From contig NC_068991.1 in NCBI RefSeq assembly GCF_001194135.2, forward strand, positions 80,807,745 to 80,859,421: 51,677 nt of DNA, read 5' to 3'. A program made the position numbers and the translations under genes. Shown in pieces: positions 923 to 50,711 of this stretch; the stretch's first letter is position 1; every line of letters starts with the position of its first letter. The stretch comes from Octopus bimaculoides. Taxonomy: Eukaryota. The notes beneath the pieces are model-generated. The model did not search any database and was not told where the DNA came from. It was given only the letters and a program-made list of their open reading frames with translations.

Positions 923-1003
923 CTTATCTTCGAAGAATTTTCTTTCAATCTGTTCAAGCGTTTTCTGGTGTTGTTCATCTGCGACTCTTAAAGCTTCTTT
1001 CAA
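923..1003 (-). CDS. BBOF1: BBOF1/CCDC176-like exon: LKEALRVADEQHQKTLEQIERKFFEDK
   Basis: 81 nt, AG acceptor (ct at 1004-1005), GT donor (ac at 921-922), phase 0/0. Gapless by-eye match to human BBOF1 LKENLRNTERIHQETLRRLESRFFEEK as recalled. Confidence 0.85.
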
Positions 1004-1379
1004 CTACAAATGATAAAATATTAAATAATCAGATAAAAAGGAGTCACTTTGTTTTCTTTGAATGGCTCTGTTTTCTATTTACTACACAGGCATCGAGTCT
1101 GGCTCTCTTATTTGTACCAATAAACAATGTTCTTTGATTCTTTCACTTGTCTCAGACATTGGGCTGCAGCCATGCTGGAACACTGAATAGGTTAGTTGAA
1201 TAAATCAACCCAATCACCCCAAACCTTATTCTTTTTAAGTCTGGTTCTTAAGTTATCAGTCTTTTGCAGAACTGCAAAGTCACAGCGACATAAACAAACT
1301 GACACCAAACATCAAGTAGTGCAAGGGTGGGGATGGACAAGTGCAAAGTGACACACATGCATACATATATGTGTGCATA

Positions 1380-1545
1380 TACATGACAAGCTTCCATACA
1401 GTTTCCATTTACCAAATTCATTCACAAGACATCAGTTGGTTGGAGGCTAGAGTAGAAGGCATTTTCCAAGGTGCCATCAAGTGGAACTGAACTAGAAACC
1501 ATATGGTTACGAAGCAAGTCTCTTAACCATACAACTAAGTTTGTA
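1380..1545 (-). mobile_element. tRNA-derived SINE with CORE-like domain
   Basis: Reverse complement resembles the 9708-9870 copy (tggttaagag..cttcgtaacc..gttc..agttccact..ggcaccttgg..aatgccttctact). Confidence 0.6.
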
Positions 1546-2544
1546 CCTAGAAGGGGCTTCAGCAATTTGAACTCAAAGAATAGTGGCTTGGAACAAATAC
1601 CAATGATTCTGCCAAGTTCTCAGTTGCATAAATGGTCAATAAAAATAAATAAATAAAAGGACAAAGTAGAAAGGAGAAAGAGAGAAATGTTAAAGGTTCT
1701 TGAAAATGATCCTAATATGGACCCTAATTTTACTTAAAAGCCCCTCACTTCTATCAGTTTAGATTCTGGATATTATTCCTATTGTGGGCACCACATTCTT
1801 GTATGTTGTACTGTATGAAGTGACTAAAACGGTTGACACCAACAAGTGTCAAATACTACCGCTGCAGACAGAGTCGCAGCCAAACGATGCCATCATTAAA
1901 AATGCTGAAGTAAAACGACGATGACCACAACGATTATGATAATCATGATGATTATGATGATGACAACAGCAGTGGAGGTGATAACAATGACAGGTTGGTT
2001 GAGGTGATGATGATGAAAACCTCTGGATATCTACATCCAAAAGAAGCACTAACACTGTTTTACAATCTTTAGCACCATCAATATCCTTACCACTACTACT
2101 TCTACCATCACCACCACTACCACTACTACAAATGCATCTCACATCTTCACTCCTGTCTCTGAGATGTGAGATATTCAAAAATGAATACAAAGACATGGGA
2201 TGAGGTGGTCAAGCATGGCCTTTGAATATTGAACCTCACAGAGGTAATGACAGGAGAGGAGACCTTTGGAGATATGCTGTGATTGAGAAGACCTGGCAAA
2301 TAAAGTGAGATCAGTCAAGCATGTGCAACCCAGTTAAGAGTACGCTGATGCGTCGTGCAATATGATATGCTTCAGAAGACCTGTTGAGTCAAGTAAAACC
2401 AATATCGTAGCTGTAACCAGTGCCCCCTCACTGGCTCCCATGCCAGTGGCATGTAAAATGCACCATCCGAACATGGCCGATGCCAGGTCCACTTGACTGG
2501 CTCCAATGTTTGTGGCATTTAAAAAGCACCAACCAAAAGTGGTC

Positions 2545-3870
2545 GATGTCAGGGAAACTAATCGCATTCTTTGAAGAAAATATCTTGCTGAGTGATACCC
2601 AGCATGGCTTTCGACCAGGTAGGAGCTGCCTGACTCATCTCTTACAATATGACTGGGTATTGAGGTAGTTACAACTCAAATGTGGACGTAATATACCTTG
2701 ATTTTGCAAAAGCTTTTGATAAAGTGGATCATGGTATGATATGCCACAAACTGCGTAATCTCAGCATAGCTGGAAGACTTGGCGAGTGATTACATGACTT
2801 TCTGAAAGATAGAAGTCAGGCAGTAGTGGCCAATGGAGCCACCACCTCAATGTAAACACAAATAGTGAGTGGTGTTCCACAGGGCACTGTCTTGGGACCA
2901 CTGCTTTTCATAGTGGCCCTCTCAGATATGCCCTCAGCAGCCCGGACAGCCACTCTTGCTAGTTACGCAGACGATATGAAAGTCTCGTAGAAAATACAGA
3001 ACTCCAGCAATGTTGCACATCTGCAGCAGAAGTTGAACTCCATTTACAGATGGGCTGAAGATAATAATATGCAGTTTAATGCTGAAAAATTCCAAGCCCT
3101 GCGCTACCAACGTCCAAAACTGAATATGAAACTTACAGAGTACACTGGTCTGCAGGGAATTTCAATCCCAGAGCCTAAATCAGTGAGAGACCTGGGTATC
3201 GACATGAGTGATGATACCTCTTTCCAAGTGTACATTACCAGGATGGCAACAAAGTGCAGACGATTGGCTGGATGGATCCTAAGAACAGAGATAAGGAAGC
3301 CATGATGGTCCTCTGGAGGAAATTTGTCCTCAGCCACCTGGATTAAAACTCCCAGCTATCGTCACTCAACAGTGTAAAATTAACAGTAGACCATGAAGCA
3401 ATCCAGCAAAGATTCACAAAGAAGATTGTCTCTTTGAAATTGCTCAGCTACTGGGAAAGGCTGAAACAGCTAAGACTCTACTCCTTGGAGAGAAGGCGGG
3501 AGAGGTATGCAGTAATGTACATCTGGAAGATCCTGAAAGGAATTGTGCCAAATTTTGGCATTGAAAGCTACACAAATGCCAGAACAGGACGACACTGCAT
3601 AGTACCAAAGATCCCAGCAATGCCATCGCACTTCAGGACCAGTTACTGCAACAGTTTGGGTTTCAGGGGCCCACAGTTTTTTAATATTCCCCCAAAGAGC
3701 CTGAGGAACCTGCACAAAGCAGATGTAGGGGTTTTTAAATCAAAGCTGGACCTCTTCCTGTCGAAAGTCCCAAATGAACCTACCTCACGGCAAGAGGTAC
3801 AAATGAGGGTAGCGACGTCAAACTCCCTTATTCACCAAATGCCACATACTAGAAGAGGTTCTCAATAATA
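2545..3870 (+). mobile_element. CR1/L2-group LINE, 5'-truncated RT and C-terminus, degenerate
   Basis: QHGFRPGRSC, YLDFAKAFDKVDH, GVPQGTVLGPLLF, YADD (~2964), SLERRRERY and VPNEP...SNSL motifs, broken by stops and frameshifts. Confidence 0.9.
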
Positions 3871-4261: not shown

Positions 4262-4405
4262 CTCTTCTATTTCCTTCTGCATTTCTTTATTCTCTGCAGA
4301 AATTTGCCGGACTTGTTTGAGGTCATTGTGATAACTATCCGCTTCTTGTCTTTTTGCTTCTAGTTTATCTTCAAGATTGCTTAACTGTTCCTGGAAGTCA
4401 ACAGT
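4262..4405 (-). CDS. BBOF1: BBOF1-like exon: TVDFQEQLSNLEDKLEAKRQEADSYHNDLKQVRQISAENKEMQKEIEE
   Basis: 144 nt, polypyrimidine tract + AG acceptor, GAG|GTAAGT donor, phase 0/0. Coiled coil; aligns without gaps to human ...QINELE...HTELKAVRQ...ERELDD as recalled. Confidence 0.88.
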
Positions 4406-5012: not shown

Positions 5013-5078
5013 CAATATAGAAATTTCTTTCTCGTGCTTCTTTTGGAGTTCACGGACTTCTGTTTGTAATCGGTCAAT
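5013..5078 (-). CDS. BBOF1: BBOF1-like exon: IDRLQTEVRELQKKHEKEISIL
   Basis: 66 nt, ttccag acceptor, GT donor, phase 0/0. Equal in length to human IEKLKQQLNETKEKAQEEKDKL as recalled. Confidence 0.8.
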
Positions 5079-8523: not shown

Positions 8524-8647
8524 AGATTCCTCTTTTTTGCCATCTTGGGTTTTCAGATAATTCAGCACTTCGATGGTGTCCCATTCAACCTGGCAGATCT
8601 GACTTTGCAGGGATTCATTTTCCATGAGCAACTTAAAGGCATATTCC
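8524..8647 (-). CDS. BBOF1: BBOF1-like exon: (R)EYAFKLLMENESLQSQICQVEWDTIEVLNYLKTQDGKKEES
   Basis: 124 nt, ttccag acceptor, GTATGA donor, phase 2/0. Gapless match to human DTSRILAKSNEDLKKKQCKMEKDIMSVLSYLKKQDQEKDNM as recalled. Confidence 0.88.
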
Positions 8648-9545: not shown

Positions 9546-9656
9546 CTGTAGTGTAACTTGATTTTCTCTGCATTGTTTAACCTAATACCCCAAATAGCTG
9601 AGCTGGCTGCTGCAAGGCCAGCATTGCTTTCTCTCTTCTTTTTTGTATTATTTCTG
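9546..9656 (-). CDS. BBOF1: BBOF1-like exon: RNNTKKKRESNAGLAAASSAIWGIRLNNAEKIKLHY(R)
   Basis: 111 nt (108 with the alternative NAG), acceptor ttcttccag, CAG|GTAACC donor, phase 2/2. AASSAIWGIRL..E......YR matches human AKANASLWEARLEVTELSRIKYR as recalled. Confidence 0.82.
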
Positions 9657-13171: not shown

Positions 13172-14019
13172 GCTTTGAACTGGTGTACACTGTGTTTACT
13201 TTCGAAATGATTCAAGAATAGTGAAACTGAGGATAATTCTTGTTGCATCCTACACACACACTCACACACACTAAAGTACATGGCATTTTATTATCTCATT
13301 CCTCCCTTGCCACTTTTCTTCACATAATTATCCGTCATATGTAATCAAGAATGATTCTTGCAGGAAATGTTTCCATCTGTGACGGAAATGTCACAAGCAA
13401 ATTGTAACAAAACTCGTTATTTTGACGAACTATTTCATATCTAATTAGATTGTCATTATGAGTAGTTAACAACCAGCCTCTTGGTGGTCATACTGTCTGC
13501 TAGAAAGAGCAGCGAAAATACATATCAGAAAACACTTTACTGTCATATCTAAATTAACTATATCATTATAGACAAACTAAAGAGAGTTTAAGTTTTGATT
13601 CAGTCTACTAGAAACACCAGCCAAATATCTCTCAAATCTCACTTTATCTTTATGTCGAAATTCATTATATAAATATGAGCCAACTCAGGAGTTAATAAGT
13701 TGGTGGTCAATTTGCTAGAAACACCAGCTCAAACATTTCTCAAATTGCATCCTACTGTCTTAAAACAAAAAAAGGAAGGACATATTCAATGAAGTAGCTC
13801 AAGAAGCATTATGTCTGAATGAAAGATATGTTGGTCATCACGGGGAGACTTTTGATCAAATGTCTGTCTGTTCAGAGTTGATCTATGGCTAAATAAATTA
13901 CTGGCGACAACTCTATCCCTAACTGCACCCTAAGTTACATCTTAACTGTGGGTTATTGACCTTACAGTAGGAGATTGATCACATTCTTTGGTAGATAGTT
14001 CAGAGAAAGCGATCCTGGA

Positions 14020-14617
14020 GGAAGCAACATGAGCCACCATTAGCCACCCCAAAAGCGGGTCTTCACCCTAAAAATGTCTTGCTTTGTGTCTGGTGGGATT
14101 GGAAAGGAATTCTGTACTATGAGCTTCTCCCAAGTAAGCAGACAATTAATTCTGAGAAATACTGCACACAACTGGACAAGTTAAAAGCAGCAATTCAAGA
14201 GAAACATCCAGAATTGGCCAACAGGAAGAGTGTTGTTTTCCAACATGATAATGCAAGACTGCACGTTTCTTTGGGAACCAGACAAAAATTGCTGCAGCTC
14301 GGCTGGGATGTGTTACCCACCCTCCATATTCACTAGATATTGCTCCTTCGGATTTCCACTTATTCAAGTTTCTGCAGAATAGTCTTAATGGTAAAAATTT
14401 CAATTCCTTGGATGACGTAAAAAGATACCTTGATGAATTCTTTGCCATGAAACTACCTCAATTCTGGGAAGAGGGTATTTTCAAGTTAAAGGAAAGATGG
14501 AGATGCATTCTGCAACAAAATGGTTCATATTTGGTTGATCAAAAATGGAATGGCAAGTATTTATTGACCTTTTTCTTTCCTTTACAAATCGGCACGAACT
14601 TTCCGGACAACCCAATA
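14020..14617 (+). mobile_element. Mariner (D,D34D) transposase C-terminal half with right TIR
   Basis: LCVWWDWKGILYYELL, FQHDNAR, (H)PPYSLDIAPSDFHLF, GIFKLKERW; ends aactttccggacaacccaaTA. Confidence 0.9.
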
Positions 14618-17170: not shown

Positions 17171-17215
<45 letters not shown>

Positions 17216-17589
17216 ATAATTCAATTTCATTTAATTAGTCAAGAAACTAATTTATATTATTTACATTATTTACATTTGACGGATATTCGTCCTCATCTTG
17301 TTTGTTGTTAACACAACGTTTCGGCTGATATACCCTCCATAACTAATTTATGTATGTATGTATGTGTGTGTATATATAAGCGTGTGTGTATAATTTAATA
17401 GATACTTAAACATGACAATTATCAATACGTAAAATCGAAACAAAACGAATAACCCACTCTGTCTTGCGAGCAACGTTTCCTTTCACCATTTTCTGCGGTT
17501 TAGCCACCAGTTCAGCAGGTTAAATTTTCAAGGTATTTATCCATTAGCGATAACGGTTAATTCGTGGTAGCCATGTCTTAAATAATTAT

Positions 17590-17602
17590 GTTGCATAGCA
17601 AC
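17590..17602. promoter_or_regulatory. Candidate RFX X-box GTTGCATAGCAAC
   Basis: One mismatch from the 13-bp X-box form GTTGCCTAGCAAC; in a CpG-retaining stretch upstream of the ciliary gene. Confidence 0.35.
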
Positions 17603-18002
17603 GAAGCTGTAGGTTCATGGGAAAAAAATGGGCAGGATATAGTTTTAATTGAAGTTTTGTTTTTAGATTTGAATATAGATTAATGACTCGTAGCTACGCA
17701 GTATTTCGTTATGCTACCATGATATACTATAAAGTATATTAAATATTTCTATAAGTCAATACTAATGTATTGCTAACGCAATAAACAGATTAGTTTTGTG
17801 TGCGTGCGCGCGTGTGTTCATTTTGTTCTGGAAAATATAATGAAATTTATTTCGTATGTGTATTTCGTGTGCAAGATTCTTGATGTGGATACGTGTGTTG
17901 AAAGAAATACAATTAAACCTTGGGAGAGGCATTATGCCGGTAATAAACACACGCACTGGTTCAGTCCTTTATTAATTTATATAGTTTTTTGTTAAATTAT
18001 TT

Positions 18003-18122
18003 CATTGCACTCTTGCAATCTCTTCAGTAACTTGTCTCTCCACTTCCATTTATTTTGAATATATATTCAAAATAAATGGAAGTGGAGAGACAAGTTACTG
18101 AAGAGATTGCAAGAGTGCAATG
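18003..18122. repeat. Perfect 120-bp palindrome (60-bp arms, no spacer) abutting an N-gap
   Basis: 18003-18062 is the exact reverse complement of 18063-18122. Confidence 0.9.
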
Positions 18123-18705
18123 NNNNNNNNNNNNNNNNNNNNNNNNNNNNNNNNNNNNNNNNNNNNNNNNNNNNNNNNNNNNNNNNNNNNNNNNNNNNNN
18201 NNNNNNNNNNNNNNNNNNNNNNNNNNNNNNNNNNNNNNNNNNNNNNNNNNNNNNNNNNNNNNNNNNNNNNNNNNNNNNNNNNNNNNNNNNNNNNNNNNNN
18301 NNNNNNNNNNNNNNNNNNNNNNNNNNNNNNNNNNNNNNNNNNNNNNNNNNNNNNNNNNNNNNNNNNNNNNNNNNNNNNNNNNNNNNNNNNNNNNNNNNNN
18401 NNNNNNNNNNNNNNNNNNNNNNNNNNNNNNNNNNNNNNNNNNNNNNNNNNNNNNNNNNNNNNNNNNNNNNNNNNNNNNNNNNNNNNNNNNNNNNNNNNNN
18501 NNNNNNNNNNNNNNNNNNNNNNNNNNNNNNNNNNNNNNNNNNNNNNNNNNNNNNNNNNNNNNNNNNNNNNNNNNNNNNNNNNNNNNNNNNNNNNNNNNNN
18601 NNNNNNNNNNNNNNNNNNNNNNNNNNNNNNNNNNNNNNNNNNNNNNNNNNNNNNNNNNNTTTTTGTATTCGAATTTATTTCGTGTAAAAAATTGTCTTAT
18701 TTCGA

Positions 18706-18968
18706 TAATTTCAACCAATCACTGACAAGTATTCAGTTGTTTATATTTACTCCTTTGGCTGATTAAGCGATGTAAAGCGTATTTAATCTCCATACCTTCG
18801 TTTGATTTGCTTTTTTCATTTTAAATTTGCTTTAACCCTAACCCTAACCCTAACCCTAACCCTAACCCTAGGGTTAGGGTTAGGGTTAATTGTTTCAGAA
18901 TCGTTTGTTTGTGTAGTCGGCACTTAATGTATATCGGCTGAATGGACGTCAGTGATTGGTTGAAATTA
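18706..18968. mobile_element. MITE-like element with 21-bp perfect inverted repeats around a telomeric-repeat palindrome
   Basis: TAATTTCAACCAATCACTGAC (18706-18726) inverted at 18948-18968; (TAACCC)6-TA-(GGGTTA)3 at 18833-18888. Confidence 0.6.
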
Positions 18969-19194
18969 CAGAAATACGAAACTTTCACATGGAATAACTT
19001 ATGGATTTTTTCTTTTAAGAAGACTAAGAGAAAAAGACGTTTTATATGACACATTCTACTAGTGTTCCAAGTTTCAAAGTGTTTCGTTAATGAAAAATGT
19101 GGCCCCCGTTTTAAAAAAGATCCCAATTTTCGTTTACCGATGCAGAAGCCCATGGTTGTCTGTAAAATTTTCTTTCATTCTTTAGTATTTTTAT

Positions 19195-19340
19195 TTATTT
19201 TCAAATTCCACCGAGGTTGACTTTGCCTTTCATTCATTCGGAATCGATAAAATAAATACTAGTTGATCACTAGTGTCGATGCAATCGACTAACCTCTCCC
19301 CGAAAATTTCAGGCCTTTGTACCTGTAATAGAAAAGATTA
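19195..19340 (+). mobile_element. SINE (gaggt(c/t)gactttgcctttcat family) whose 3' end is the LINE target site
   Basis: ttcaaattccaccgaggttgactttgcc...ttcaggcctttgtacc. Related copies at ~26740-26880, 31440-31790(-), 44600-44770(-), 47450-47650 and 48000-48130(-). Confidence 0.75.
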
Positions 19341-20164
19341 CCCAGGACATAATGTCCTGGGTAAGGCACAAAACTGCAACCGGTGGTGAAGCTCCAGTTC
19401 GGGAGGACAGGAGTTATGGGGAGCGTGGAGACACCTCTTAGTTGCCATTTCTCTGGCCCGGAGTGGTAGCACATGTTAGGGCCCCACCAATGGGTAAAAA
19501 TTGGATCCTCCCCTGCTGCCTTGCAGGATGCCTCTTTAGGCTAAGGCTACGAGAAGGAATCATCAAGTCCTCAACGGTTGATCAGGCAGACGAAGCGACA
19601 TCTATGTCTCTCAATGGCTGTGACAGCGGAAGAAGGCTATGCCAAGCGGGCTGGCTACAACAAGGCGTGGCCTAAAAGAACTGATCCATGGCAGCTCGCT
19701 GCAACTCACAGGTCAAATTCAGTACGTCTCCTCCACGGTGCCACTGATGACGTCCTCTGAGCCACGTTAGTGGTACTCCGCCTGGCAAGTGGCGGTCCAC
19801 CTTAAACAAAATCACGCCATGGCATCCCGTGCTATTTTCTTCCCTTTCCTACTCCCCCCGCTAAAGTCCTAAGGCGGCGGGCTACGGATAACGGGGACAG
19901 GCCCAGGTGGAGCTGGAAGTCTCTAGTTCCGATCCTACACGTAGGCGGCGAGCATGTGATGACCGCTCAATCAGAGACCTTGCGTCAACTCTGTTGGGCG
20001 GTAGCTATGTTCGCGACTGGACTGGCCTATTTAGGATTCCCGCAGCCCACCTCGAATGAGGAAGGACTTAGAAAAGGTGGGCTAAACATCGGATGTCGCA
20101 ACTCTACCCGGCTGAAAAGCTGCATTCAGCGGGTCACCCATTCTGCTGCCGAAATACTACTGTA

Positions 20165-23100
20165 ATGAACTTTGCTACTTGGAACGTTCGGACACTTCTG
20201 GATCACAAGGACACAAATCGACCTGCCAGAAGAACAGCCCTCGTCACACACGAACTGACCCGTTTCGATGTGGACCTCGCAGCTCTGAGTGAAACCAGGC
20301 TCTCAGGGGAAGGCTCACTTGAAGAACAAGGTTCCTGATATACGATCTTCTGGAAAGGAAAGGAGCATGGCCAACCTCATATGCACGGTGTGGGTTTTGC
20401 AATCAAGACAAAACTCGTAAACTCCCTCAATTTGACTCCGTCCTGCATCACGGAGAGAATCATGTCCATCCGAATTCACCTCTCAACATCTTCTTTCATC
20501 ACCATCTTTTTCATCTACGCTCCAATATTGGATGCTGAGGACAATATAAAGGAAGAGTTCTACCATCAACTCGACCAACAACTCACAGCTGTCCCCAGTT
20601 CAGATAAAATCCTCCTATTGGGTGACTTCAATGCAAGGGTTGGCAAAGACCATCAACTTTGGAAGAAGGTTGTCGGGAAAGACGGAGTCGGGAACTCCAA
20701 TGCAAATGGACTTCTTCTTGGACTGTGCTCTGAACACCAACTTGATGTGACAAACTCCTTCTTCAGGCAACGGAACCGCTTCAAGACCACATGGCAACAT
20801 CCCAGATCCAAGCATTGGCACCTCCTAGACTATGCCATCACAAGACAATGTGATCTCAAAGATGTTCTGATCACTCGTTCTATGCTGTCTGCTGACGACT
20901 GTTGGACCGACCACCGTCTGGTTGTCACGCGGATAAGATGGACTCTGAAGAAGAAGACATTCCCCCCAAGATCAAATTCACCTTCCCGGAGGAAGTACGA
21001 CACCACTGCCCTCCGAGACCTCCAGAAGGTCCGTCTATTTCAAGAGTCTGTCGAAAAGCAGTTAAATGAAAACCCCCCGTGTGACAGCTCTGATCCCAAC
21101 GCAGAGTGGACCACACTTAAGAACATCATCACCAAATCTGCGAGAAAAAACATCGGTTTCCAAAAGCGATCCCGTGCAGACTGGTTCGACTCAAACAGTC
21201 TTGAAATCTCCACCCTGGTTGATGGCAAGCGATTGGCACTCATTGAATATCTGAACAACCCCTCATGTTCCACGAAACTCGCCAGATTCAAGGAAGCCAA
21301 ATCACTCTGCCAAAGAAGGATTCGCGAGATCGAGAATCAATGGTGGCAAGCCAAAGCTGTCCAACTCCAATCCTTTGCTGACAGCCGTGACATGAGAAAC
21401 TTTTTTGCTGGAACCAAGGAAATCTACGGTCCCCAAAGATCATCAACATCCCAGCTGAAAACAGCAGACAACTCAACTGTCATCACCGAGAAGGATGGGG
21501 TTCTTCATTGCTGGAAAGAACACTTCGAAGCCTTGCTGAATCGCCCGTCCACTGCTTCTGAAGACCCGCCGAAGAACATTCCTCAACACCCTATCAGACC
21601 GGAACTGTCACGTTCCCCTTCCCATATCGAATTCATGACCGCTTTCAATCAAATGAAACTTAACAAAGCTCCCGGACCCGACAACATTCCCTTTGAACTC
21701 CTCAAAGCGGGTGGATCTGCTCTTANNNNNNNNNNTCCCGGACCCGACAACATTCCCTTTGAACTCCTCAAAGCGGGTGGATCTGCTCTTAGGGCAAGAC
21801 TCTTCATGCTGATTCTGCAAATCTGGGAGAAGAAACAGATTCTTCAAGATCTCAAAGATGCAGTTATAGGAATGCGTTAAATAGCTCAGCGGGCTGCGTG
21901 TTTGAATCACGTCGGAGGGTCACCACTTTATAGGTTGGTAGTCCAGAATCCATGGCCGCGTTTTTTCTTAGTCGGGGTCACCACTTTATAGGAATGCGTT
22001 AAATAGCTCAGCGGGCTGCGTGTTTGAATCACGTCGGGATCACCAGTATAGGGAAGTAGGTTATACATCATTAGATGTACACCTGACTTTCCTATATTAA
22101 ATTAGAAATTAACGGCAACGCTGAACTCCAAACTATCAACACAAACAACATTTATTCAAGGTGGAAAATATACATCTTCAATCTTGTTTGTTGAGACGTC
22201 TTCGGTGTGTGAGAACATGGTTGTTGGGACGTTGGTATATTGATGTGAGCTGTTTAGCGTGAGTTCGAAAGATGGAGAGACAGCTAGACACGTCCTTGCT
22301 CAATCGCTGGCCAGCAAGAAAGAGAGCGATCAAAGCGGGAAAGCTTGGTTGTTGAATTCCACGCATGCGTGAGACTACGCATGTGCACGGCGTTACTACA
22401 CAGTCATTGTCACCATCTTCAAGAAAGGTGATAGAAGCCTTTGTGGTAACTATCGTGGCATTTCTCTATTTTCAATCGCAGGTAAGATCATCGCTCGAAT
22501 CTTGTTACAACGTCTCCAAGTGGTAGCTGAGTCAGTTTTTCCTGAGTCACAGTGTGGTTTCAGAAGGACAAGTGGTACCATCGACATGATCTTTTGTGCA
22601 CGTCAGATCCAGGAGAATAGCCGGGAGCAACAGAAACCTGTCTTTTTCATCTTCTACGACTTGGAAAAAGCTTTCGACAGTATCCCAAGAGAGGTCATGT
22701 GGGATATCCTGCATCGTTACGGTTTTCCTGGAGGCTTCATTTCTCTGATCAAGGGTTTCCATGATGAAATAGAGGGGAAGAGTCCTTTATCAGACTGACA
22801 TCTCTGAAGAATTCAAGATCACCTGTGGCCTGAAGCAGGGATGTGTTCTTGCTCCAACCCTGTTTTCTCTCTACATCGCTGCCATGCTCTCCGAAATTCC
22901 AACAGACAACCCCGGAGTGGAACTCAGATGTAGATTTGATGGCGGACTTTTCAACGTCTCGCGTTTCCGATCAAGACGTCACTATCGAGAGCACAAGATC
23001 ACTGAGCTTCAATACGCCGATGATAACGCAGCCCCAGCTTCAAGTGCAGAGNNNNNNNNNNNNNNNNNNNNNNNNNNNNNNNNNNNNNNNNNNNNNNNNN

Positions 23101-24047: not shown

Positions 24048-24214
24048 ACTGGATTGCGAGCTCGGAAACACGAGACGCAGCCAACTACTAGAAAGGATTA
24101 TAATTTGCTACATCACAAACCAATTTGTTTCGCGTAAAGAATACATTTTGGATAATATACCCACTCTACTGACAAATATACGAGTACAACTTTTCCCTGA
24201 CTTATGGTCTATCA

Positions 24215-26957: not shown

Positions 26958-26971
26958 CGACCATAACTTTA

Positions 26972-27014
<43 letters not shown>

Positions 27015-28216: not shown

Positions 28217-29587
28217 NNNNNNNNNNNNNNNNNNNNNNNNNNNNNNNNNNNNNNNNNNNNNNNNNNNNNNNNNNNNNNNNNNNNNNNNNNNNNNNNNNNN
28301 NNNNNNNNNNNNNNNNNNNNNNNNNNNNNNNNNNNNNNNNNNNNNNNNNNNNNNNNNNNNNNNNNNNNNNNNNNNNNNNNNNNNNNNNNNNNNNNNNNNN
28401 NNNNNNNNNNNNNNNNNNNNNNNNNNNNNNNNNNNNNNNNNNNNNNNNNNNNNNNNNNNNNNNNNNNNNNNNNNNNNNNNNNNNNNNNNNNNNNNNNNNN
28501 NNNNNNNNNNNNNNNNNNNNNNNNNNNNNNNNNNNNNNNNNNNNNNNNNNNNNNNNNNNNNNNNNNNNNNNNNNNNNNNNNNNNNNNNNNNNNNNNNNNN
28601 NNNNNNNNNNNNNNNNNNNNNNNNNNNNNNNNNNNNNNNNNNNNNNNNNNNNNNNNNNNNNNNNNNNNNNNNNNNNNNNNNNNNNNNNNNNNNNNNNNNN
28701 NNNNNNNNNNNNNNNNNNNNNNNNNNNNNNNNNNNNNNNNNNNNNNNNNNNNNNNNNNNNNNNNNNNNNNNNNNNNNNNNNNNNNNNNNNNNNNNNNNNN
28801 NNNNNNNNNNNNNNNNNNNNNNNNNNNNNNNNNNNNNNNNNNNNNNNNNNNNNNNNNNNNNNNNNNNNNNNNNNNNNNNNNNNNNNNNNNNNNNNNNNNN
28901 NNNNNNNNNNNNNNNNNNNNNNNNNNNNNNNNNNNNNNNNNNNNNNNNNNNNNNNNNNNNNNNNNNNNNNNNNNNNNNNNNNNNNNNNNNNNNNNNNNNN
29001 NNNNNNNNNNNNATTCTATCAGTCTCTTTTGCCGAACCGCTAAGTTACGGGGACGTAAACGCACCAGCATCGGTTGTCAAGCGATGTTGGGCGGACAAAC
29101 ACAGACACACAAACATATACACACACATACAAATATATACATATATATACGACGGGCTTCTTTCAGTTTCCGCCTACCAAATCCACTCACAAGGCTTTGG
29201 TCGGCCTGAGGCTATAGTAGAAGACACTTGCCCAAGGTGTTACGCAGTGGGACTGAACCCAGAACCATGTGGTTGGTAAACAGCTACTTACCACACAGCC
29301 ACTCAATTAAAATATAATTAGGACTATAAAAAAGTATAACTTGTCATTCCAGAACTACTGAAACGAGTAAGTAAATACTTTGAACTAAGTTACAATTTTT
29401 GGGTCTTGTTTTTCTCATTTGTAAAATGAGCCCCCCTCCCCCCCCCCATCAATGCAACTCTGAATTTTGATTACGATCAACCAATTGCTTTATCTCATAA
29501 ATTAAAGAATCTGATGTAATTTGGCATTAAAGTTGGGAAATTTGGGTAATTTTAGCCAATCAACAGACAGCTTGGCATTAGCACCTT

Positions 29588-29601
29588 GTTACCATGACAA
29601 C
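29588..29601. promoter_or_regulatory. Candidate RFX X-box GTTACCATGACAAC with nearby CCAAT (29556-29560)
   Basis: Close match to GTNRCC-N2-RGYAAC. Could belong to a repeat. Confidence 0.3.
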
Positions 29602-30253
29602 CACATGCTGTGTTGTGGTTTACTGTTGTCTCTGTTGCACTACTTATAATTATAAAATTTTTTATTGAAATAAATTTTTTGAACCATTATGATTTTAAGA
29701 AATGTTACTAATTCGTTTTTGTAATTCAAGAAAGTAAAGTTGCAAGTTTCATTTTTAATTACACCAGTTCATCACAATACATCATCATCATCGTCGTCGT
29801 CGTCGTTTAACGTCCGCTTTCCATGCTAGNNNNNNNNNNNNNNNNNNNNNNNNNNNNNNNNNNNNNNNNNNNNNNNNNNNNNNNNNNNNNNNNNNNNNNN
29901 NNNNNNNNNNNNNNNNNNNNNNNNNNNNNNNNNNNNNNNNNNNNNNNNNNNNNNNNNNNNNNNNNNNNNNNNNNNNNNNNNNNNNNNNNNNNNNNNNNNN
30001 NNNNNNNNNNNNNNNNNNNNNNNNNNNNNNNNNNNNNNNNNNNNNNNNNNNNNNNNNNNNNNNNNNNNNNNNNNNNNNNNNNNNNNNNNNNNNNNNNNNN
30101 NNNNNNNNNNNNNNNNNNNNNNNNNNNNNNNNNNNNNNNNNNNNNNNNNNNNNNNNNNNNNNNNNNNNNNNNNNNNNNNNNNNNNNNNNNNNNNNNNNNN
30201 NNNNNNNNNNNNNNNNNNNNNNNNNNNNNNNNNNNNNNNNNNNNNNNNNNNNN

Positions 30254-30800
30254 GTATCACTGGATACTTGGAGCCTGCCATTGTCAAAGAGTTCGGGAAG
30301 GTCGTTTTCCCTGTCGCCACTGGGGTCCATAGGGTCAAAGTTGTCTTCGACCCTTCCCAGTTGACTGTGGGAGCCAGTTACATTGAGCAACCTGGGGCCA
30401 CTATCCCCCAGGCCTCGCCGGATGGTATCTTCAATCCATCTGGCCTCCATGCCCGGGGGTAGCCCGCACACCCAGGCTCTTATTATTTTTCTCCCACTAT
30501 AAGTGGGGAGGAAGACAACCTTCTTTCTCTCCAAGGGTTTCTCCGTGAAGGTACAGGCTTCCTTGGGGGTACCAAATAGCAACCAGACTGTTGCAAATTT
30601 GTACCCCCAGGAAATAAATTTTACAGTTGGCAGGTATACTGCCAACTCTTTTTCAATGCAATCTTTGTTGAATTGAACGATAATGCTGAGCGACCTAGAA
30701 TAGGTCCTCAGCACCACCATCCGCTTTTCGAAATCTTTCAACCACTGTTTAGGTGGGACAATTTCCAACTCTACAACCTTGTCCTTGTTTTTTGCCATGT
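30254..30800 (-). mobile_element. Possible non-LTR retrotransposon ORF1 (L1/Tx1-like) fragment
   Basis: Open frame MAKNKDKVVELEIVPP...KFATVWLLFGTPKEAC...RAWVCGLPPGM with an RRM-like pattern, no splice structure, running into a gap. Family assignment is inference. Confidence 0.35.
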
Positions 30801-32639
30801 TTTTTTTTAAAGAAAAAAAGGTCCAAAAACAGTTCACACAACTGCATGTCCTCAGCATTTGGGGCCCATGCATCATACAGTCTACCTTTCACTCTGAGTG
30901 AGAGGCTCTTAGTTGCCAGCAAGAGGTAGGAGCCCACTGAACTTTGCCCAGCCCCGCCACCACCTCCATTTCTACCACCACTATTACCATCAACATTTCT
31001 CTCTTTCCCTCTCTCTCTCTCTACCTTTCCTTTCAACTAATCACATTCACTCTGCATCATGTCATGGATGCTTTCCTTCCCTCTTTTTCTCTCTCTCTCT
31101 CTCATTCCAGAAGGTGAAGTAAATAGATTTATTTTATATCAGTCTTCCACTTATAATGTATGTCTCTACTCATCTCTTTGTCTGCTAGTTTATCCCCCTT
31201 TCTCGCTATAATTCCTGTGAGTTAAGGTCATCATTATTGTCATCATCAACCAACTCTTTTTAGTGATTGTTCTTATAGGGGCTTCGTGTCTTGTTAATAG
31301 AAACCAATAGAGACACAGAATTGCTACATCATCATCATCATCATCGTTTAACGTCCGCTTTCCATGCTACGGAGATTAAAATATTTAATTATTGATCTAA
31401 AATTAAGCAATGTGATGTGATTATTGACTCTGATAAAATTCTTAACTCTAGTCTAGTCAAGTATTTTAGCAACCCACATGAAGACAAGAGGCAAAATTGA
31501 TCTTTGTAGGATTTGAACTCAGAATGTAAAAAGCCAGAAGACTTGCCTTTAAGCGTTTTGTCCAACATGCTAATGGTTCTGCCAGTTTGCCCCCTTATCA
31601 CTAATTATGATAATTGTTTCAAATTTTGGAGGCCAGCAGCTTTAGGGAGATGGAGTTAGTTGATGGTATTGACAATTTATTGATCCTTTAATGATGAAAT
31701 GCAAAGTTGACCTCTTTGGGATTTGAACTTAATGTAAAAAGCCACAAGAAATATCACTAAGCATTTTGTCCAATGTGCTAACAATTTTGCTACCTTACTT
31801 CTACTATTACTACTACTACTGCAATAATAAAAGAAGTGAAATAGAATTTGCGTGTGTGTATTTCTTATTGGCATTGTGATCCACCCAAGATACAACAAAC
31901 CACCCCCACTTACACAAGTCTGTCTTGAGCCCTAGTACACCTAAGGCTGGAGTATAACCCTGTTTCTATGCTGTATATGTGATGGAAATTACAAAATTCT
32001 CCACTGAATGGGACACTAGTTTGTTGCAGGAATAACTTCCCAGTTATTGTTGGAATTCATTTACAGCTGAGTGGACTGGAGCACCATGAAATGAAGTGTC
32101 TTGCTCAAGAACACAATGTGCCACCCAGTTTGGAAATCAGAACCAATGTCTTACAATCATGAATGCAACAGCTTAACCACTATGTCATGTGCCATGGCAC
32201 CACATGGGCACTTCTATGTGGCACTGCAGGGGCACTTTTACATTGATATTACCATGAGTGCTTTACACCACTAGCAGGATCAGTCTTAGAAACTTTTGCT
32301 GCAGGATTTGGGTCTTCTTGGTTATGGCAAGGCACCAGGTATCTCAGTCCTTTGTCATCTCGCCTGAAACGTTCAGCTTCCTGAGGTCATTCTTCAGTAG
32401 TTCATCCTATTTCCCTTCCTGGGTCTCTCACTTCCACATATACATAGGCACAACTGTGGCTGTGTGATAAAGGAGTCTGTTTCCGAACCACATGGTTTCA
32501 GGTTGTTCAATCCCACATGACACCTTATGCAAAAATAGAAAAAAAATGGGTATAAAACTGAAAAATAAGTGAAACAAAAATGTATGTATCATTATATAAT
32601 TTATTTTTTCTCTATTTTTCTGTTTTTCTTCTTAGGTAA

Positions 32640-32901
32640 ATGGAAAAGACTTCAATCATTAAACCTAGTCTTTGTAACTCTAGAAGGAAACTCTCTAGGA
32701 TACTTAATTCATTCAGTTTTCCGATGAAGATGTGGGCTGCAGGTTTTACTGTTCTCTGCGTTATGGTAGTTTGGCTCTCTACTGCTTACCGCTGGAATTA
32801 CCCTTCTTCCAAAGAAGGCAAATATATTTATGGCATCATGTTTGATGCTGGAAGCACTGGCTCTAGGATTCATATATTCAGTTTTAGCAACGATAATAAA
32901 G
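32640..32901 (+). CDS. ENTPD5: ENTPD5/6-like NTPDase (GDA1/CD39 family), first coding exon with hydrophobic anchor and ACR1
   Basis: Acceptor ttcttag at 32635, ATG 32640, WAAGFTVLCVMVVWLSTAY, YGIMFDAGSTGSRIHIF (ACR1), donor G|GTGAGT, phase 1. Confidence 0.93.
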
Positions 32902-35820: not shown

Positions 35821-35900
35821 AAAAAAAGATGATATTGATAGCAGATATATTTAATGAAATTAAACCCGGATTATCAGCTTATGCTAGTGACCCAAAGAAG
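35821..35900 (+). CDS. ENTPD5: ENTPD5/6-like exon: (E)KKMILIADIFNEIKPGLSAYASDPKK
   Basis: 80 nt, tttcag acceptor, AAG|GTGAGT donor, phase 1/0, KPGLS motif. Confidence 0.93.
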
Positions 35901-39323: not shown

Positions 39324-39467
39324 GCAGCTGGTTCTTTACTACCCTTACTTAATTTAGCCAAATCAAAAGTTCCAGAGGACTTGCAGTCATCCTGTGCAAT
39401 TGCCCTGAAGGCCACAGCAGGTTTGCGCTTACTTGGTGAACAACCTGCCAACAATATTCTTCTTGAG
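39324..39467 (+). CDS. ENTPD5: ENTPD5/6-like exon with ACR2 (LKATAGLRLL)
   Basis: 144 nt, ttgcag acceptor, GAG|GTCAGT donor, phase 0/0. Confidence 0.95.
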
Positions 39468-40448: not shown

Positions 40449-40524
40449 GTAGAGAAGCTGTTTAAGAGGTTTCCTTTCAAAATGCTTGAAAATAATACTG
40501 AAATAATGAGTGGCACTAAAGAAG
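40449..40524 (+). CDS. ENTPD5: ENTPD5/6-like exon: VEKLFKRFPFKMLENNTEIMSGTKE(G), ACR3 start
   Basis: 76 nt, accag acceptor, AAG|GTTAGT donor, phase 0/1. Confidence 0.92.
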
Positions 40525-42822: not shown

Positions 42823-42858
42823 GAATTTACAGCTGGCTGACTGTCAACTATCTCCTTG
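42823..42858 (+). CDS. ENTPD5: ENTPD5/6-like 36-nt exon: (G)IYSWLTVNYLL, ACR3
   Basis: Long pyrimidine tract + AG, G|GTAAGT donor, phase 1/1. Confidence 0.93.
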
Positions 42859-44944: not shown

Positions 44945-45110
44945 ATTTACTCGATACACCTAACAGAACCGCTGTAGCTTTGGATCTTGGTGGAGGCTCA
45001 ACCCAGATCACATTTGTACCATCAAAGCCTGGAACATTGCAACAGGTTGGGGAGGATTTCAAGGAATCTGTAACTTTATTTGGACAAAGCTACAATTTAT
45101 ACACTCATAG
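44945..45110 (+). CDS. ENTPD5: ENTPD5/6-like exon with ACR4 (ALDLGGGSTQITF) to YNLYTHS
   Basis: 166 nt, acag acceptor, AG|GTATAC donor, phase 1/2. Confidence 0.94.
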
Positions 45111-47887: not shown

Positions 47888-47943
47888 TTACCTTGGACTT
47901 GGTTTGATGTCTGCCAGGTTTAAAGTTTCGGAAAAAGTTAAGA
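47888..47943 (+). CDS. ENTPD5: ENTPD5/6-like exon: (S)YLGLGLMSARFKVSEKVK
   Basis: 56 nt, tttcag acceptor, SYLGxG motif. Donor A|GTTAGT chosen because it gives the phase 1 required by the next exon. Confidence 0.88.
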
Positions 47944-48808
47944 GTTAGTAATATATTTATTTCAAATTTTGGGAAGGCCAGTAGGTTTGAGGGAGGGGCT
48001 AAGTCAATTAAATCAACCCCAGTGTTCAACTGGTACTTATTTTATCAACCCTGAAAGGATGAAAGGCAAAATCAACACCAGCAGAATTTGAACTAAGAAT
48101 GTAAAACTGGATGAAATCACTTGGCGTGCTAACTGTTCTAGCAGGTCACGGCCTTAAGAGTTAAAAGATACATTAATCAGAATATGTGAATGATGGTGGA
48201 TTGATAACAATTCTATAGGGGATAGCCTAAAGAGTTATTGATGTATTAATCTGTATTTATGAAGGGTGGTGGATTAGTAGAATTAGTAGAGCATCTAATA
48301 GAATTTTCTAGAATATTTCATTGATTTAATTTAGACTTTGAGTTCAAATTCTGGCTGGGTCGATCTTTTGCCTTTCAGCCTTCCTTGATTTGATAAAATA
48401 TTGTACCAGTATTTCACAGTACTGTATTACAAATCAATATGGATATGTGTGTATGACTGTATAGTAATATACATCAGGGTGCAGTGGATACATGGAAGTT
48501 CTTTTCTCCATTTTTCTCTCTCTCCTTGTCTATTCTTTTAGAAGATGAGTGTATACTTGAAATATAGAAAACTTTACTTCTCTATTTCTTCCTATTTCCT
48601 CTGTGTAAACCCAACACACTCTGCTTGTATGTTTTGTATATTGCCTTCATGTGATATATATTTTTATTGATTTATATTACTATATGTATGTATGTGCATA
48701 TATATGTGTGTGTGTGTGTGTGTGTATTTATTATTGAACGTGTGCACATTAACATATGTATGTGCATGCATTTATGTATGTATATGTATGCTGCATTGAT
48801 TTATGTTT

Positions 48809-50312
48809 GAGGTCTGATCAAAAAGTATTAGGACTGTTGCTATGGTAATAGAGCTAAAGTACATAGAGCGAACCCACTTTTCACAGATTGAACTTGAATT
48901 CTGTTGTGCATGTACTCTGATGCTCTCACTCACTTCCATTGTTTATAGAAATGCTTGGATGTAAAGTGTGCTGAGCATTGGTCATCTTAAGAAGATTGGG
49001 TTTCAGCTGCGCACGATCTCCTTGATTGTGTTGTGGAAGATGAAAACCGTTTGAAGATGGTCATAACAGGTGATGAATCATGGATCTATGGCTTTGACCC
49101 CGAAACCAAGGCTCAGTCTTTGTAGTGGAAGACTCCGACAAGATTTCAAGACATTAAAGAAATGCAAGAGAATGCAATTATAGTGTAGACTCTATATATT
49201 CATATATTCAAATGTAACAGGTAACAGCTAGCCTTTGGCCACTGTTTGTATCCTGTTGTGTCCACTACTCCGATTGGTTGGTATTGGCACAATTTGTCCC
49301 CTACTCTGTTGTACCAACTGACTGTGGATAGCCAGTCAGAAACTTTAGATAGCATCACGGGAACAACCTTTTACGAACCCTTTTCAAGCCTAGCTTTTTC
49401 TTCATTATACGTCTTTGGTTCCAGACCTTTTAAGGTCTAGCCACTGACCACACAAGACACAGCCAGTTCCAGTGACAACACCACAGCAGCTATGTTGAGG
49501 CTCACCAACTTTGTCCAACAGCATTCAGCAACCTCCATCTCTGTCACAACCATTGTCCTAATGTCAACATCTCTACATACACAATTCAATCAGCAACTCG
49601 CCCAGGTTCTAACACTTCACTGTTTGTGAATTACTTCATCATGGATCAACAGCAAATATACAACCTGCTAGAACTCCTATACCAAGTGACTCAGGCTGCA
49701 GCATCACAGCCACAACTTCACGTACAACATGTACCACAACTGGCTCAGCATCACGGCCGCAACTTCTTGATACAGTATTTCAACTACCGTGTACAGTTGA
49801 CTACAAACTGGTATTTCTCATCTTACTTCTATTTACAGACTCTTTCATTTGTCATTTCTTGTATGTTCTTAACATGCACACATACATCCATGCCTATACA
49901 CACATACATTTGTTCTCATGACAGCCTGTCTATTATTCTGTATACATGACGCACACACACACACACACATTAACATGTCAATAAACCTTCTCTTAAACAT
50001 TCTATTCAGTTGTATCTCCTTTTTCTCACTGGCGCTTAATTGTACTATCCAATTCCTCTTTATTGTATTGGCTGTGTGATGTGCTACAAAAGAGCTATTC
50101 TTGTCACCTCGCATCGCACAGTCCTTACACAATGAAGTGGTTGCTTGTTAATTCAAAAAAGGAGTTCCAGGAATGCTTCCATCAACAGAAATGATGCTGG
50201 ATAAAGTGTGCAGCTTCAGAAGGGAACGACTTTGAAAGAGATTAAATGCCAAAGTGATATGTGCTGTAATTTTCTTTTTCTAACACCAGTTTTGGTACTT
50301 TTTGATCAGGCG
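48809..50312 (+). mobile_element. Internally deleted mariner with unrelated filler between intact TIRs
   Basis: CTGATCAAAAAGTA (48814-48827) inverted at 50296-50309; ITGDESWIYGFDPETKAQS at ~49060-49120; KEFQECF...CW.KC..SEG..FE* at ~50155-50245. Confidence 0.75.
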
Positions 50313-50626
50313 TATGTTTGTGTATGCATTTATGTATGTTTGAATGTATGTGCACACATTGTGTATACATGGTAAAAACTATCAGAATCTAATTTGACAA
50401 AGGAAAGCATGTATATTTATTAAGTGATTGGCCCCTTCTTTATAGTATAAAATGGTTTGGCCTAAATGACTTATAAGAGTTAAACATCTTGTCCAAGCTA
50501 TCTTGATTTCTGTTGCAGAACTAAATGTAAGTTTCCTGCTCTATACTTTATTCCTAAACAACTAGAGAAATTTTTTGCTTTTTAGATATGCTTGAATAAT
50601 TAATTTTAACTTTGTTTCCTTTTCAG

Positions 50627-50711
50627 CTACTCCTCTTCAATTGCAATCAGTATGTATACCAGAGAATACTAAAACCAGCTGGTCCTTTTCTGGGGATACT
50701 TATCAAGTTAG
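50627..50711 (+). CDS. ENTPD5: ENTPD5/6-like exon: (T)TPLQLQSVCIPENTKTSWSFSGDTYQV
   Basis: 85 nt, tttcag acceptor, AG|GTAAAC donor, phase 1/2. SxCxP...W.F.G..Y pattern of the family; the gene continues beyond the window. Confidence 0.9.

What the first reader, a model, noticed from the sequence alone, without database searches (positions are those of the whole stretch)
923..50711. Head-to-head BBOF1 / ENTPD5-like gene pair: possible mollusc-vertebrate microsynteny
Seen: five minus-strand exons (9656-9546, 8647-8524, 5078-5013, 4405-4262, 1003-923) splice in frame into a ~175-aa coiled coil. The plus-strand apyrase has eight phase-consistent exons from 32640. Recalled knowledge: the coiled coil aligns almost without gaps to the human BBOF1 (CCDC176) N-terminal third, and human BBOF1 and ENTPD5 are adjacent and divergently transcribed on 14q24.3. 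Inference: the divergent pair may predate the protostome-deuterostome split and has survived ~23 kb of TE accumulation between the coding regions, in a lineage known for genome rearrangement. That suggests a shared regulatory constraint.
Basis: partly seen in the sequence, partly recalled or inferred. Interest (0 to 1): 0.75.

Follow-up and report, generated by a model that had tools for sequence, protein, structure and literature searches.

The report
Ancient BBOF1–ENTPD5 head-to-head gene pair
This octopus window holds the 5' halves of two already annotated genes, a cilia gene (BBOF1) and an ER nucleotidase gene (ENTPD5/6 type), that point away from each other exactly as in frog, abalone, a brachiopod and a ribbon worm, so the pairing is very old; this is a real but fairly ordinary example of conserved gene neighbourhood.

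Summary
The window is Octopus bimaculoides scaffold CM046611.1:80,807,745-80,859,421. The five minus-strand exons are canonical and in frame. The eight plus-strand exons give exactly residues 1-301 of the NCBI ENTPD5 model.

Two corrections are needed. With it, the product equals residues 1-185 of NCBI's "basal body-orientation factor 1". The start codons are therefore 15.15 kb apart, not ~23 kb, and 7.8 kb of the supposed spacer is BBOF1 intron 1.

No assembly gap touches coding sequence, and colinearity with O. sinensis proteins shows no missing exon.

The same divergent DUF4515/GDA1_CD39 pair occurs in four other species:
- Lingula: 1.4 kb apart
- Lineus: 2.0 kb
- Xenopus laevis: 5.6 kb, with COQ6 downstream as in human
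- Haliotis rubra: 22 kb

It is broken in Saccoglossus. The octopus apyrase is a co-orthologue of vertebrate ENTPD5 and ENTPD6, not of ENTPD5 alone.

The bilaterian age of the pair is well supported. A shared regulatory constraint is plausible but untested. This is a new named example of a well-known class (conserved ancestral microsyntenic pairs). Interest is low to moderate.

The parts
17458..17489 (-). BBOF1 first coding exon (MVKGNVARKTE, donor GTGGGT).
   Evidence: adding it reproduces residues 1-185 of NCBI O. bimaculoides BBOF1 (P0278) exactly.
9546..9653 (-). BBOF1 coding exon 2.
8524..8647 (-). BBOF1 coding exon 3
   Evidence: 93% identity to O. sinensis BBOF1 residues 43-85.
5013..5078 (-). 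BBOF1 coding exon 4
4262..4405 (-). BBOF1 coding exon 5
923..1003 (-). BBOF1 coding exon 6. The gene continues beyond the window start (residues 186-507).
32640..32901 (+). ENTPD5/6-type NTPDase coding exon 1: ATG, N-terminal hydrophobic anchor, ACR1 motif DAGSTGSR. An acceptor AG lies 4 nt before the ATG, which implies an upstream 5'UTR exon.
35821..35900 (+). NTPDase exon 2
39324..39467 (+). NTPDase exon 3 (ACR2 motif LKATAGLRLL)
40449..40524 (+). NTPDase exon 4
42823..42858 (+). NTPDase exon 5 (ACR3 motif, GIYSWLTVNYLL). It lies 61 nt after gap 42604-42761.
44945..45110 (+). NTPDase exon 6 (ACR4 motif LDLGGGSTQITF)
47888..47943 (+). NTPDase exon 7
50627..50711 (+). NTPDase exon 8. The gene continues beyond the window end.
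17490..32639 (.). Spacer between the two start codons (15,150 bp, of which about 3.6 kb are N)
17171..30000 (.). CpG-undepleted block: CpG observed/expected 0.66-1.46, against 0.1-0.4 in both gene bodies. It is probably a germline-unmethylated intergenic domain that holds both promoters.
   Evidence: The methylation reading is inference.
20072..24047 (+). LINE retrotransposon remnant (AP-endonuclease, reverse transcriptase, C2H2 tail) inside the spacer. A gene caller lists it as an RVT_1 'gene'.
13995..14333 (+). Mariner-type transposase fragment in BBOF1 intron 1
   Evidence: Transposase_1, E=1e-27.
29588..29601 (.). Single palindromic X-box-like site GTTACCATGACAAC near the ENTPD-side edge of the CpG block. 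It is not statistically significant.
   Evidence: 12 of 100 shuffles reach the same count.

Best explanation
The window carries the 5' parts of two ordinary, already annotated Octopus bimaculoides genes arranged head-to-head. One is BBOF1, a DUF4515 coiled-coil protein of ciliary basal bodies, on the minus strand. The other is the single cephalopod member of the ENTPD5/6 group of GDA1/CD39 nucleoside phosphatases, on the plus strand.

Shown:
- Gene identities, exon structures, orientation and spacing.
- The same arrangement in abalone, brachiopod, nemertean and frog.

Inferred:
- The ancestral state was a compact divergent promoter region, about 1-2 kb as in Lingula and Lineus.
- In octopus (15 kb) and abalone (22 kb) the spacer was inflated by LINE/SINE insertions and repeats without the genes being separated.
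- The most likely reason for retention (my estimate about 0.55) is some shared cis-regulatory dependence of the co-regulation type described by Irimia et al. 2012. That would mean promoters or elements lying in one hypomethylated domain between the two 5' ends.
- A tight bidirectional promoter shorter than 1 kb is unlikely in octopus.
For: Gene models:
- Searches give the exon models, which are exact matches to NCBI proteins P0278 and P0001.

BBOF1 identity:
- Exhaustive HMMER returned 113 hits. The best is O. sinensis BBOF1 (90% identity), followed by shark, lamprey, teleost and marsupial BBOF1.
- The alignment to a mammalian BBOF1 is gap-free.
- DUF4515 scores above its cutoff.

NTPDase identity:
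- GDA1_CD39 at E=2.8e-61, with ACR1-4 present in the sequence.
- In an NJ tree, invertebrates split from vertebrate ENTPD5+ENTPD6 in 200/200 bootstraps.

Synteny, with DUF4515 on the minus strand directly upstream of GDA1_CD39 on the plus strand:
- Lingula: 1,441 bp.
- Lineus: 1,991 bp.
- Xenopus laevis: 5,626 bp, with a COQ6-like gene downstream.
- Haliotis rubra: on the same contig, 22.1 kb, divergent, with no called gene and no large ORF in the 20 kb examined.
- tblastn confirms that these upstream genes are BBOF1 homologues.
- The human and pig order is COQ6-ENTPD5-C14orf45/BBOF1-ALDH6A1.

Spacer:
- It contains a LINE with endonuclease and RT domains and SINE-like repeats.
- A sharp CpG o/e step marks a 13-kb block between the two 5' ends.

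Chance: by my estimate, two specified genes falling adjacent and divergent among about 20,000 genes has a probability of order 1e-4 or less per genome.
Against: - The pair is broken in Saccoglossus, so it is not indispensable.
- The 15-22 kb spacers with transposable elements in octopus and abalone show that close promoter apposition is not required.
- No expression, TSS, chromatin or methylation data were available.
- Three gaps (18123-18659, 28217-29012, 29830-30253) may hide the promoters.
- No cnidarian, amphioxus, echinoderm or arthropod locus could be examined because the look-ups were exhausted.
- A full reciprocal best-hit test against the octopus proteome was not possible.
- Human orientation was not shown by a tool.
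Confidence: 0.85

Rival explanations
1. Neutral inertia. The pair is ancestral but is kept only because the ancestral spacer was very short (1-2 kb) and offered almost no target for rearrangement breakpoints. The octopus and abalone expansions are recent, and no shared regulation exists.
For: - Spacers are short in the slowly evolving Lingula and Lineus.
- The pair was lost in Saccoglossus.
- The two proteins have unrelated functions: ciliary basal body versus ER UDPase (my own knowledge).
- The octopus spacer tolerates a LINE and SINE-like repeats.
Against: - The pair is retained in five of six informative lineages from four phyla, including the heavily rearranged coleoid genome.
- Conserved 5'-5' pairs as a class exceed neutral expectation and are enriched for co-expression (PMC3514665; PMC9023564).
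- The pair is still intact with 15-22 kb spacers, which are no longer small targets.
Confidence: 0.35
2. Independent (convergent) juxtaposition or mistaken orthology. On this reading the octopus neighbours are not the orthologues of the vertebrate pair.
For: - Coiled-coil proteins attract spurious similarity: one generic coiled-coil hit, P0134, appears.
- The first word-indexed search found nothing.
Against: - All named top hits are BBOF1, with end-to-end colinearity.
- The BBOF1-family profile retrieved a single O. bimaculoides protein.
- The identical arrangement occurs in four other lineages.
Confidence: 0.03
3. Assembly artefact. On this reading the many N gaps joined two unlinked octopus regions, so the adjacency is not real in this species.
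For: - Nine gaps lie in the window, five of them in the spacer.
- One gap is a demonstrable join artefact with a 56-nt duplication.
- The locus lies at the very end of the scaffold.
Against: - O. sinensis BBOF1 and ENTPD5 lie on one and the same 77.5-Mb scaffold.
- Abalone has the same divergent arrangement on a gap-free stretch.
- The CpG block runs continuously across the gaps.
Confidence: 0.03

Closest known systems
Conserved ancestral microsyntenic pairs (CAMPs) of Irimia et al. 2012, Genome Res 22:2356 (PMC3514665)
   Same: Two unrelated genes are adjacent in distant metazoan phyla, mostly in conserved 5'-5' orientation. The paper explains this by co-regulation or shared elements.
   Different: This pair is not named in that paper's main text, and its supplementary list was not held. 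The octopus and abalone spacers of 15-22 kb are larger than those of a classic bidirectional promoter. Neither gene is a trans-dev gene, so the GRB/bystander model does not apply.
Vertebrate 14q24.3-type locus COQ6-ENTPD5-BBOF1(C14orf45/CCDC176)-ALDH6A1
   Same: The same two gene families are adjacent. In Xenopus laevis they are divergent, with COQ6 on the other side of ENTPD5.
   Different: In octopus the NTPDase is the undivided ENTPD5/6 pro-orthologue. COQ6 linkage is not seen in Lingula or Lineus. In octopus it cannot be assessed because the scaffold ends.
'Metazoan microsyntenies' retained in coleoid cephalopods (Schmidbaur et al. 2022, PMC9023564)
   Same: Ancient bilaterian gene linkages survive the large coleoid genome reorganisation. 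The paper reports them to be co-expressed and to have larger intergenic regions.
   Different: Those blocks required at least 3 genes, so a two-gene pair would not be listed. Neither gene is mentioned in the main text.
Mammalian bidirectional promoters (spacer <1 kb; Adachi & Lieber 2002, cited in PMC3514665)
   Same: Divergent orientation of two unrelated genes.
   Different: The ATG-to-ATG distance here is 15 kb, with a LINE in between. TSS positions are unknown.

Membership tests
BBOF1 (basal body-orientation factor 1; Pfam DUF4515, PF14988) | DUF4515 domain above Pfam's gathering score | tested here: met
   the 175-aa window product scores 30 bits against a cutoff of 24.5; the full annotated protein scores 40.4 bits.
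BBOF1 (basal body-orientation factor 1; Pfam DUF4515, PF14988) | Best database relatives are BBOF1 proteins, colinear from the N-terminus | tested here: met
   every named hit is BBOF1 (octopus, shark, lamprey, teleosts, marsupials, Oikopleura); 183 aa align with 0 gaps to a mammalian BBOF1.
BBOF1 (basal body-orientation factor 1; Pfam DUF4515, PF14988) | Reciprocal best hit against the complete octopus proteome, or a rooted tree against other DUF4515 paralogues | not testable with these tools
   No octopus proteome was available to search. Partial support: the BBOF1-family profile returned only one O. bimaculoides protein, P0278.
BBOF1 (basal body-orientation factor 1; Pfam DUF4515, PF14988) | Conserved C-terminal motifs (DLTWEQKE..LF.KMN, STN.V, TF.TQ) | tested here: met
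   These lie outside the window. They are present in the annotated continuation P0278 and match the family consensus.
BBOF1 (basal body-orientation factor 1; Pfam DUF4515, PF14988) | Basal-body localisation and a role in cilia orientation | not testable with these tools
   The function is known from Xenopus (Chien et al. 2013, seen only as a reference in PMC4741028).
GDA1/CD39 NTPDase, ENTPD5/6 subgroup | GDA1_CD39 domain (PF01150) | tested here: met
   E=2.8e-61, 207.9 bits.
GDA1/CD39 NTPDase, ENTPD5/6 subgroup | Apyrase conserved regions ACR1-ACR4 | tested here: met
   Read directly in the spliced product: DAGSTGSR, LKATAGLRLL, GTKEGIYSWLTVNYLL, LDLGGGSTQITF.
GDA1/CD39 NTPDase, ENTPD5/6 subgroup | ACR5 and the C-terminal domain | tested here: inconclusive
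   These lie beyond the window. The O. bimaculoides model (370 aa) is truncated at the scaffold end. O. sinensis P0002 (425 aa) has them.
GDA1/CD39 NTPDase, ENTPD5/6 subgroup | One-to-one orthology with vertebrate ENTPD5 rather than ENTPD6 | tested here: not met
   jawed-vertebrate ENTPD5 and ENTPD6 are each monophyletic (200/200), and all invertebrate sequences lie across a single split from both (200/200). HMMER scores are similar to both. The gene is a co-orthologue.
Conserved ancestral microsyntenic pair (CAMP) | Orthologues adjacent in both protostomes and deuterostomes | tested here: met
   plus this window.
Conserved ancestral microsyntenic pair (CAMP) | Conserved 5'-5' orientation | tested here: met
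   DUF4515 on the minus strand and GDA1_CD39 on the plus strand in all five species (the same calls).
Conserved ancestral microsyntenic pair (CAMP) | No intervening host gene | tested here: met
   The octopus spacer holds only a LINE ORF. No gene lies between the pair in Lingula, Lineus or Xenopus. In Haliotis, 20 of 22 kb were examined.
Conserved ancestral microsyntenic pair (CAMP) | Co-expression or a shared regulatory element | not testable with these tools
   No expression or chromatin data were available. Only an indirect CpG o/e pattern was seen.
Classic bidirectional promoter pair | TSS-to-TSS distance below about 1 kb | tested here: inconclusive
   ATG-to-ATG is 15,150 bp. The TSSs are unknown, but the CpG block suggests roughly 12 kb between transcription units.

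The most novel reading that the evidence does not exclude
The BBOF1-ENTPD5/6 pair is held together by a real shared cis-regulatory dependence that survives even when the promoters are pushed 15-22 kb apart by transposable elements. One possibility is a common hypomethylated regulatory domain or a shared element between the two 5' ends, such as the X-box-like site at 29.6 kb. This would link a motile-cilia gene and an ER glycosylation UDPase in one regulatory unit since the bilaterian ancestor.
Probability: 0.3. Interest if true: 0.45.

Novelty: new member of a known kind. Interest (0 to 1): 0.3.

Why it matters
This is a clean, easily checked example of an ancient 5'-5' gene pair that survived the large genome reorganisation of coleoid cephalopods. 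The spacer ranges from 1.4 kb (brachiopod) to 22 kb (abalone). That natural series could be used to ask whether such pairs are kept by shared regulation or by inertia.

In practice, it corrects the local picture in three ways:
- The first BBOF1 exon is placed.
- The spacer is shortened to 15 kb.
- The apyrase is shown to be an ENTPD5/6 co-orthologue.

It does not reveal a new kind of system. Both genes are already annotated, and conserved microsyntenic pairs number in the hundreds.

Tried and rejected
(1) The word-indexed protein search with the 175-aa coiled coil found nothing. This was a false negative, because exhaustive HMMER found a 90%-identical O. sinensis BBOF1.

(2) In one search I first read BBOF1 exons upstream of Octodon ENTPD5. 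This was my error: the file L005.fa also holds L006, and the hits were the Lineus locus. Re-run on L005 alone, there is no BBOF1 signal within 10 kb of the Octodon CDS start. That locus is uninformative, probably because of long 5'UTR introns.

(3) Four contig look-ups returned nothing on record: Xenopus tropicalis, Crassostrea virginica, Haliotis rufescens and Magallana gigas. Oysters therefore remain untested.

(4) I scanned for an X-box (RFX) motif as a possible ciliary promoter element. There is one palindromic site at 29588-29601, not above chance. No consistent site appears in the spacers of other species.

(5) Literature search: no held paper names this pair as conserved synteny. Co-mentions are livestock or CNV gene lists only. 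The supplement of Irimia et al. is not held.

(6) The first NJ run timed out. I repeated it with a faster distance routine.

(7) The large direct-repeat family D1 is an artefact of N runs.

Full report
**Where the window is.** The spliced plus-strand product is 100% identical to NCBI 'ENTPD5 [Octopus bimaculoides]'. The contig fetched for that protein overlaps the window base for base. This places the window at CM046611.1:80,807,745-80,859,421 of assembly GCA_001194135.2, about 9 kb from the end of the 80.87-Mb scaffold.

**The observation.** The eight plus-strand exons (32640-32901, 35821-35900, 39324-39467, 40449-40524, 42823-42858, 44945-45110, 47888-47943, 50627-50711) are canonical and phase-consistent. 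They carry apyrase conserved regions 1-4. Pfam gives DUF4515 for the first product (E=6e-7, above the cutoff) and GDA1_CD39 for the second (E=2.8e-61).

**Two corrections.**
In the window it is 17489-17458 on the minus strand (MVKGNVARKTE, donor GTGGGT).
- With this exon, and with the acceptor at 9653 instead of 9656, the six exons reproduce residues 1-185 of NCBI BBOF1 isoform X2 exactly. The acceptor is a tandem CAGCAG, and both choices are in frame.
- The start codons are therefore 15,150 bp apart, not about 23 kb. The stretch 9654-17457 is BBOF1 intron 1.

**Gaps.**
- None of the nine N runs touches a coding exon.
- Three lie in BBOF1 introns and one in an NTPDase intron, 61 nt before exon 5. 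Five lie in the spacer.
- The annotated proteins come from the same assembly, so the independent test is colinearity with O. sinensis. BBOF1 residues 6-181 are covered exon after exon with nothing missing. The NTPDase aligns over 291 residues at 85% identity with four gapped positions.
- Gap 21726-21735 is flanked by an exact 56-nt duplication, so it is a join artefact.
- Gaps at 18123-18659, 28217-29012 and 29830-30253 may hide promoters or UTR exons.

**Gene identities.**
- An exhaustive HMMER scan of 1.84 billion representatives gave 113 hits for the coiled coil. The best is O. sinensis BBOF1 (90% identity). Next come proteins named BBOF1 in chimaera, lamprey, teleosts and marsupials, and unnamed choanoflagellate homologues.
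- The only non-BBOF1 name sampled was a generic long coiled coil.
- The alignment to a mammalian BBOF1 runs 183 residues without a gap.
- A BBOF1-family profile retrieved a single O. bimaculoides protein, already named BBOF1 by NCBI.
- For the apyrase, vertebrate ENTPD5 and ENTPD6 score alike. In an NJ tree, ENTPD5 and ENTPD6 of jawed vertebrates are each monophyletic, and all invertebrate sequences sit across one split from both (200/200).
- The octopus gene is thus the undivided ENTPD5/6 pro-orthologue. In vertebrates, the copy that kept the BBOF1 neighbour is ENTPD5.

**Synteny.** A DUF4515 gene on the minus strand lies directly upstream of the GDA1_CD39 gene on the plus strand in each of these species:
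- Lingula anatina: 1,441 bp between called genes.
- Lineus longissimus: 1,991 bp.
- Xenopus laevis: 5,626 bp, with a COQ6-like FAD_binding_3 gene on the other side.

Further points:
- tblastn confirms that these upstream genes are BBOF1 homologues.
- In Haliotis rubra both genes lie on contig QXJH01000078.1. BBOF1 is on the minus strand with its 5' end at 2,498,906. The NTPDase is on the plus strand from 2,521,040.
- That is a divergent arrangement 22.1 kb apart. No gene is called, and there is no substantial ORF, in the 20 kb examined.
- Published gene lists give the order COQ6, ENTPD5, C14orf45/BBOF1, ALDH6A1 in human and pig.
- In O. sinensis both genes are on the same 77.5-Mb scaffold, and in Lamellibrachia on the same 181-kb contig.
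- The one counter-example is Saccoglossus, where BBOF1 is head-to-head with an RNF216-like gene.
- Octodon was uninformative (my earlier reading was a file-handling error).
- Cnidarians, amphioxus, echinoderms, arthropods and oysters could not be examined.
- Given that chance adjacency of two named genes is of order 1e-4 per genome (my estimate), common ancestry of the arrangement in protostomes and deuterostomes is the economical conclusion.

**The spacer.**
- Between the start codons lies a LINE remnant on the plus strand, at about 20.07-24.05 kb. It has AP-endonuclease and reverse-transcriptase domains. A gene caller lists it as an RVT_1 gene.
- There are also SINE-like 130-150-nt repeats and 3.6 kb of N.
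- The introns carry mariner and RT fragments.
- CpG observed/expected is 0.1-0.4 across both gene bodies but 0.66-1.46 from about 17.2 to 30 kb.
- In invertebrates with gene-body methylation, this pattern usually marks methylated transcription units against unmethylated intergenic DNA (established knowledge; here an inference).
- The pattern suggests that BBOF1 transcription starts close to its first coding exon. It also suggests that the NTPDase unit starts near 29-30 kb. This is consistent with the acceptor AG 4 nt before the ATG at 32640, which implies a 5'UTR exon.
- The promoters would then be roughly 12 kb apart, which is not a classic bidirectional promoter.

**Mechanism.**
- What is shown is an ancestral 5'-5' pair that has stayed together while its spacer varied from 1.4 to 22 kb.
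- Why it stayed together is not shown.
- Survival in five of six informative lineages, including a coleoid genome, favours some cis-regulatory dependence of the co-regulation type (Irimia et al. 2012; Schmidbaur et al. 2022).
- The loss in Saccoglossus, the unrelated protein functions and the TE-tolerant spacer keep neutral inertia a serious rival.
- I put constraint at about 0.55 and inertia at about 0.35.

**Novelty.**
- Both genes are already annotated.
- Conserved ancestral microsyntenic pairs are a known class of several hundred members, and about 275 ancient blocks are known to persist in cephalopods.
- No held paper names this particular pair, and the relevant supplementary list could not be read.
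- It is best filed as a new named member of a known kind, of modest interest.

Noticed in passing
window 21670-21791: The 10-N gap at 21726-21735 is flanked by an exact 56-nt duplication (21670-21725 = 21736-21791). This is a contig-join artefact inside a LINE ORF. The true sequence probably has one copy and no gap.
   Followed up: yes
window 17171-30000 versus the rest: There is a sharp step in CpG observed/expected: 0.66-1.46 in the spacer against 0.1-0.4 in both gene bodies. This looks like an unmethylated intergenic domain bounded by two methylated transcription units.
   Followed up: partly
window 9651-9656: BBOF1 exon 2 has a tandem (NAGNAG) acceptor, CAGCAG. Both choices are in frame, which fits the X1/X2 isoforms that differ by one residue in NCBI models.
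   Followed up: partly
window 32623-32640: A good acceptor (TTTTTCTTCTTAG) ends 4 nt before the NTPDase ATG. A non-coding first exon should therefore lie upstream, possibly in or near gaps 28217-29012 or 29830-30253.
   Followed up: no
window 29588-29601: The only X-box-like (RFX-type) palindrome in the window, GTTACCATGACAAC, sits at the ENTPD-side edge of the CpG block. It is not above chance (12/100 shuffles).
   Followed up: partly
window 32367-32517 and 33640-33790; 460-590, 14748-14878, 15773-15903; 9738-9885, 29129-29282, 47192-47343: There are three families of 130-150-nt dispersed SINE-like repeats. One pair (96% identical) brackets NTPDase exon 1.
   Followed up: no
L001 36605-37988 (end of scaffold CM046611.1): The O. 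bimaculoides ENTPD5 model is 370 aa and lacks the C-terminal ~55 residues, including ACR5, that O. sinensis has (425 aa). The gene ends 1.4 kb from the scaffold end, among N gaps.
   Followed up: partly
window 13995-14333, 45458-46512: Mariner-type transposase remnants lie in BBOF1 intron 1 (Pfam Transposase_1, E=1e-27). By eye, another lies in NTPDase intron 6.
   Followed up: partly
window 30254-30876 (-): A 207-aa open frame abutting gap 29830-30253 has no Pfam match. It could be an uncharacterised TE protein. It lies between the CpG block and the NTPDase ATG.
   Followed up: partly
L002 5667-6795: In Lingula, a C-type lectin gene is nested in the first intron of BBOF1, on the same strand.
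   Followed up: no
NJ tree: The hagfish protein named ENTPD5 groups with jawed-vertebrate ENTPD6 (194/200 bootstraps), so its name may be wrong or cyclostome paralogy may be unresolved.
   Followed up: no
L009 3189-4865: The abalone spacer contains a 1.7-kb minisatellite with a unit of about 69 nt that reads as a 559-aa open frame.
   Followed up: no
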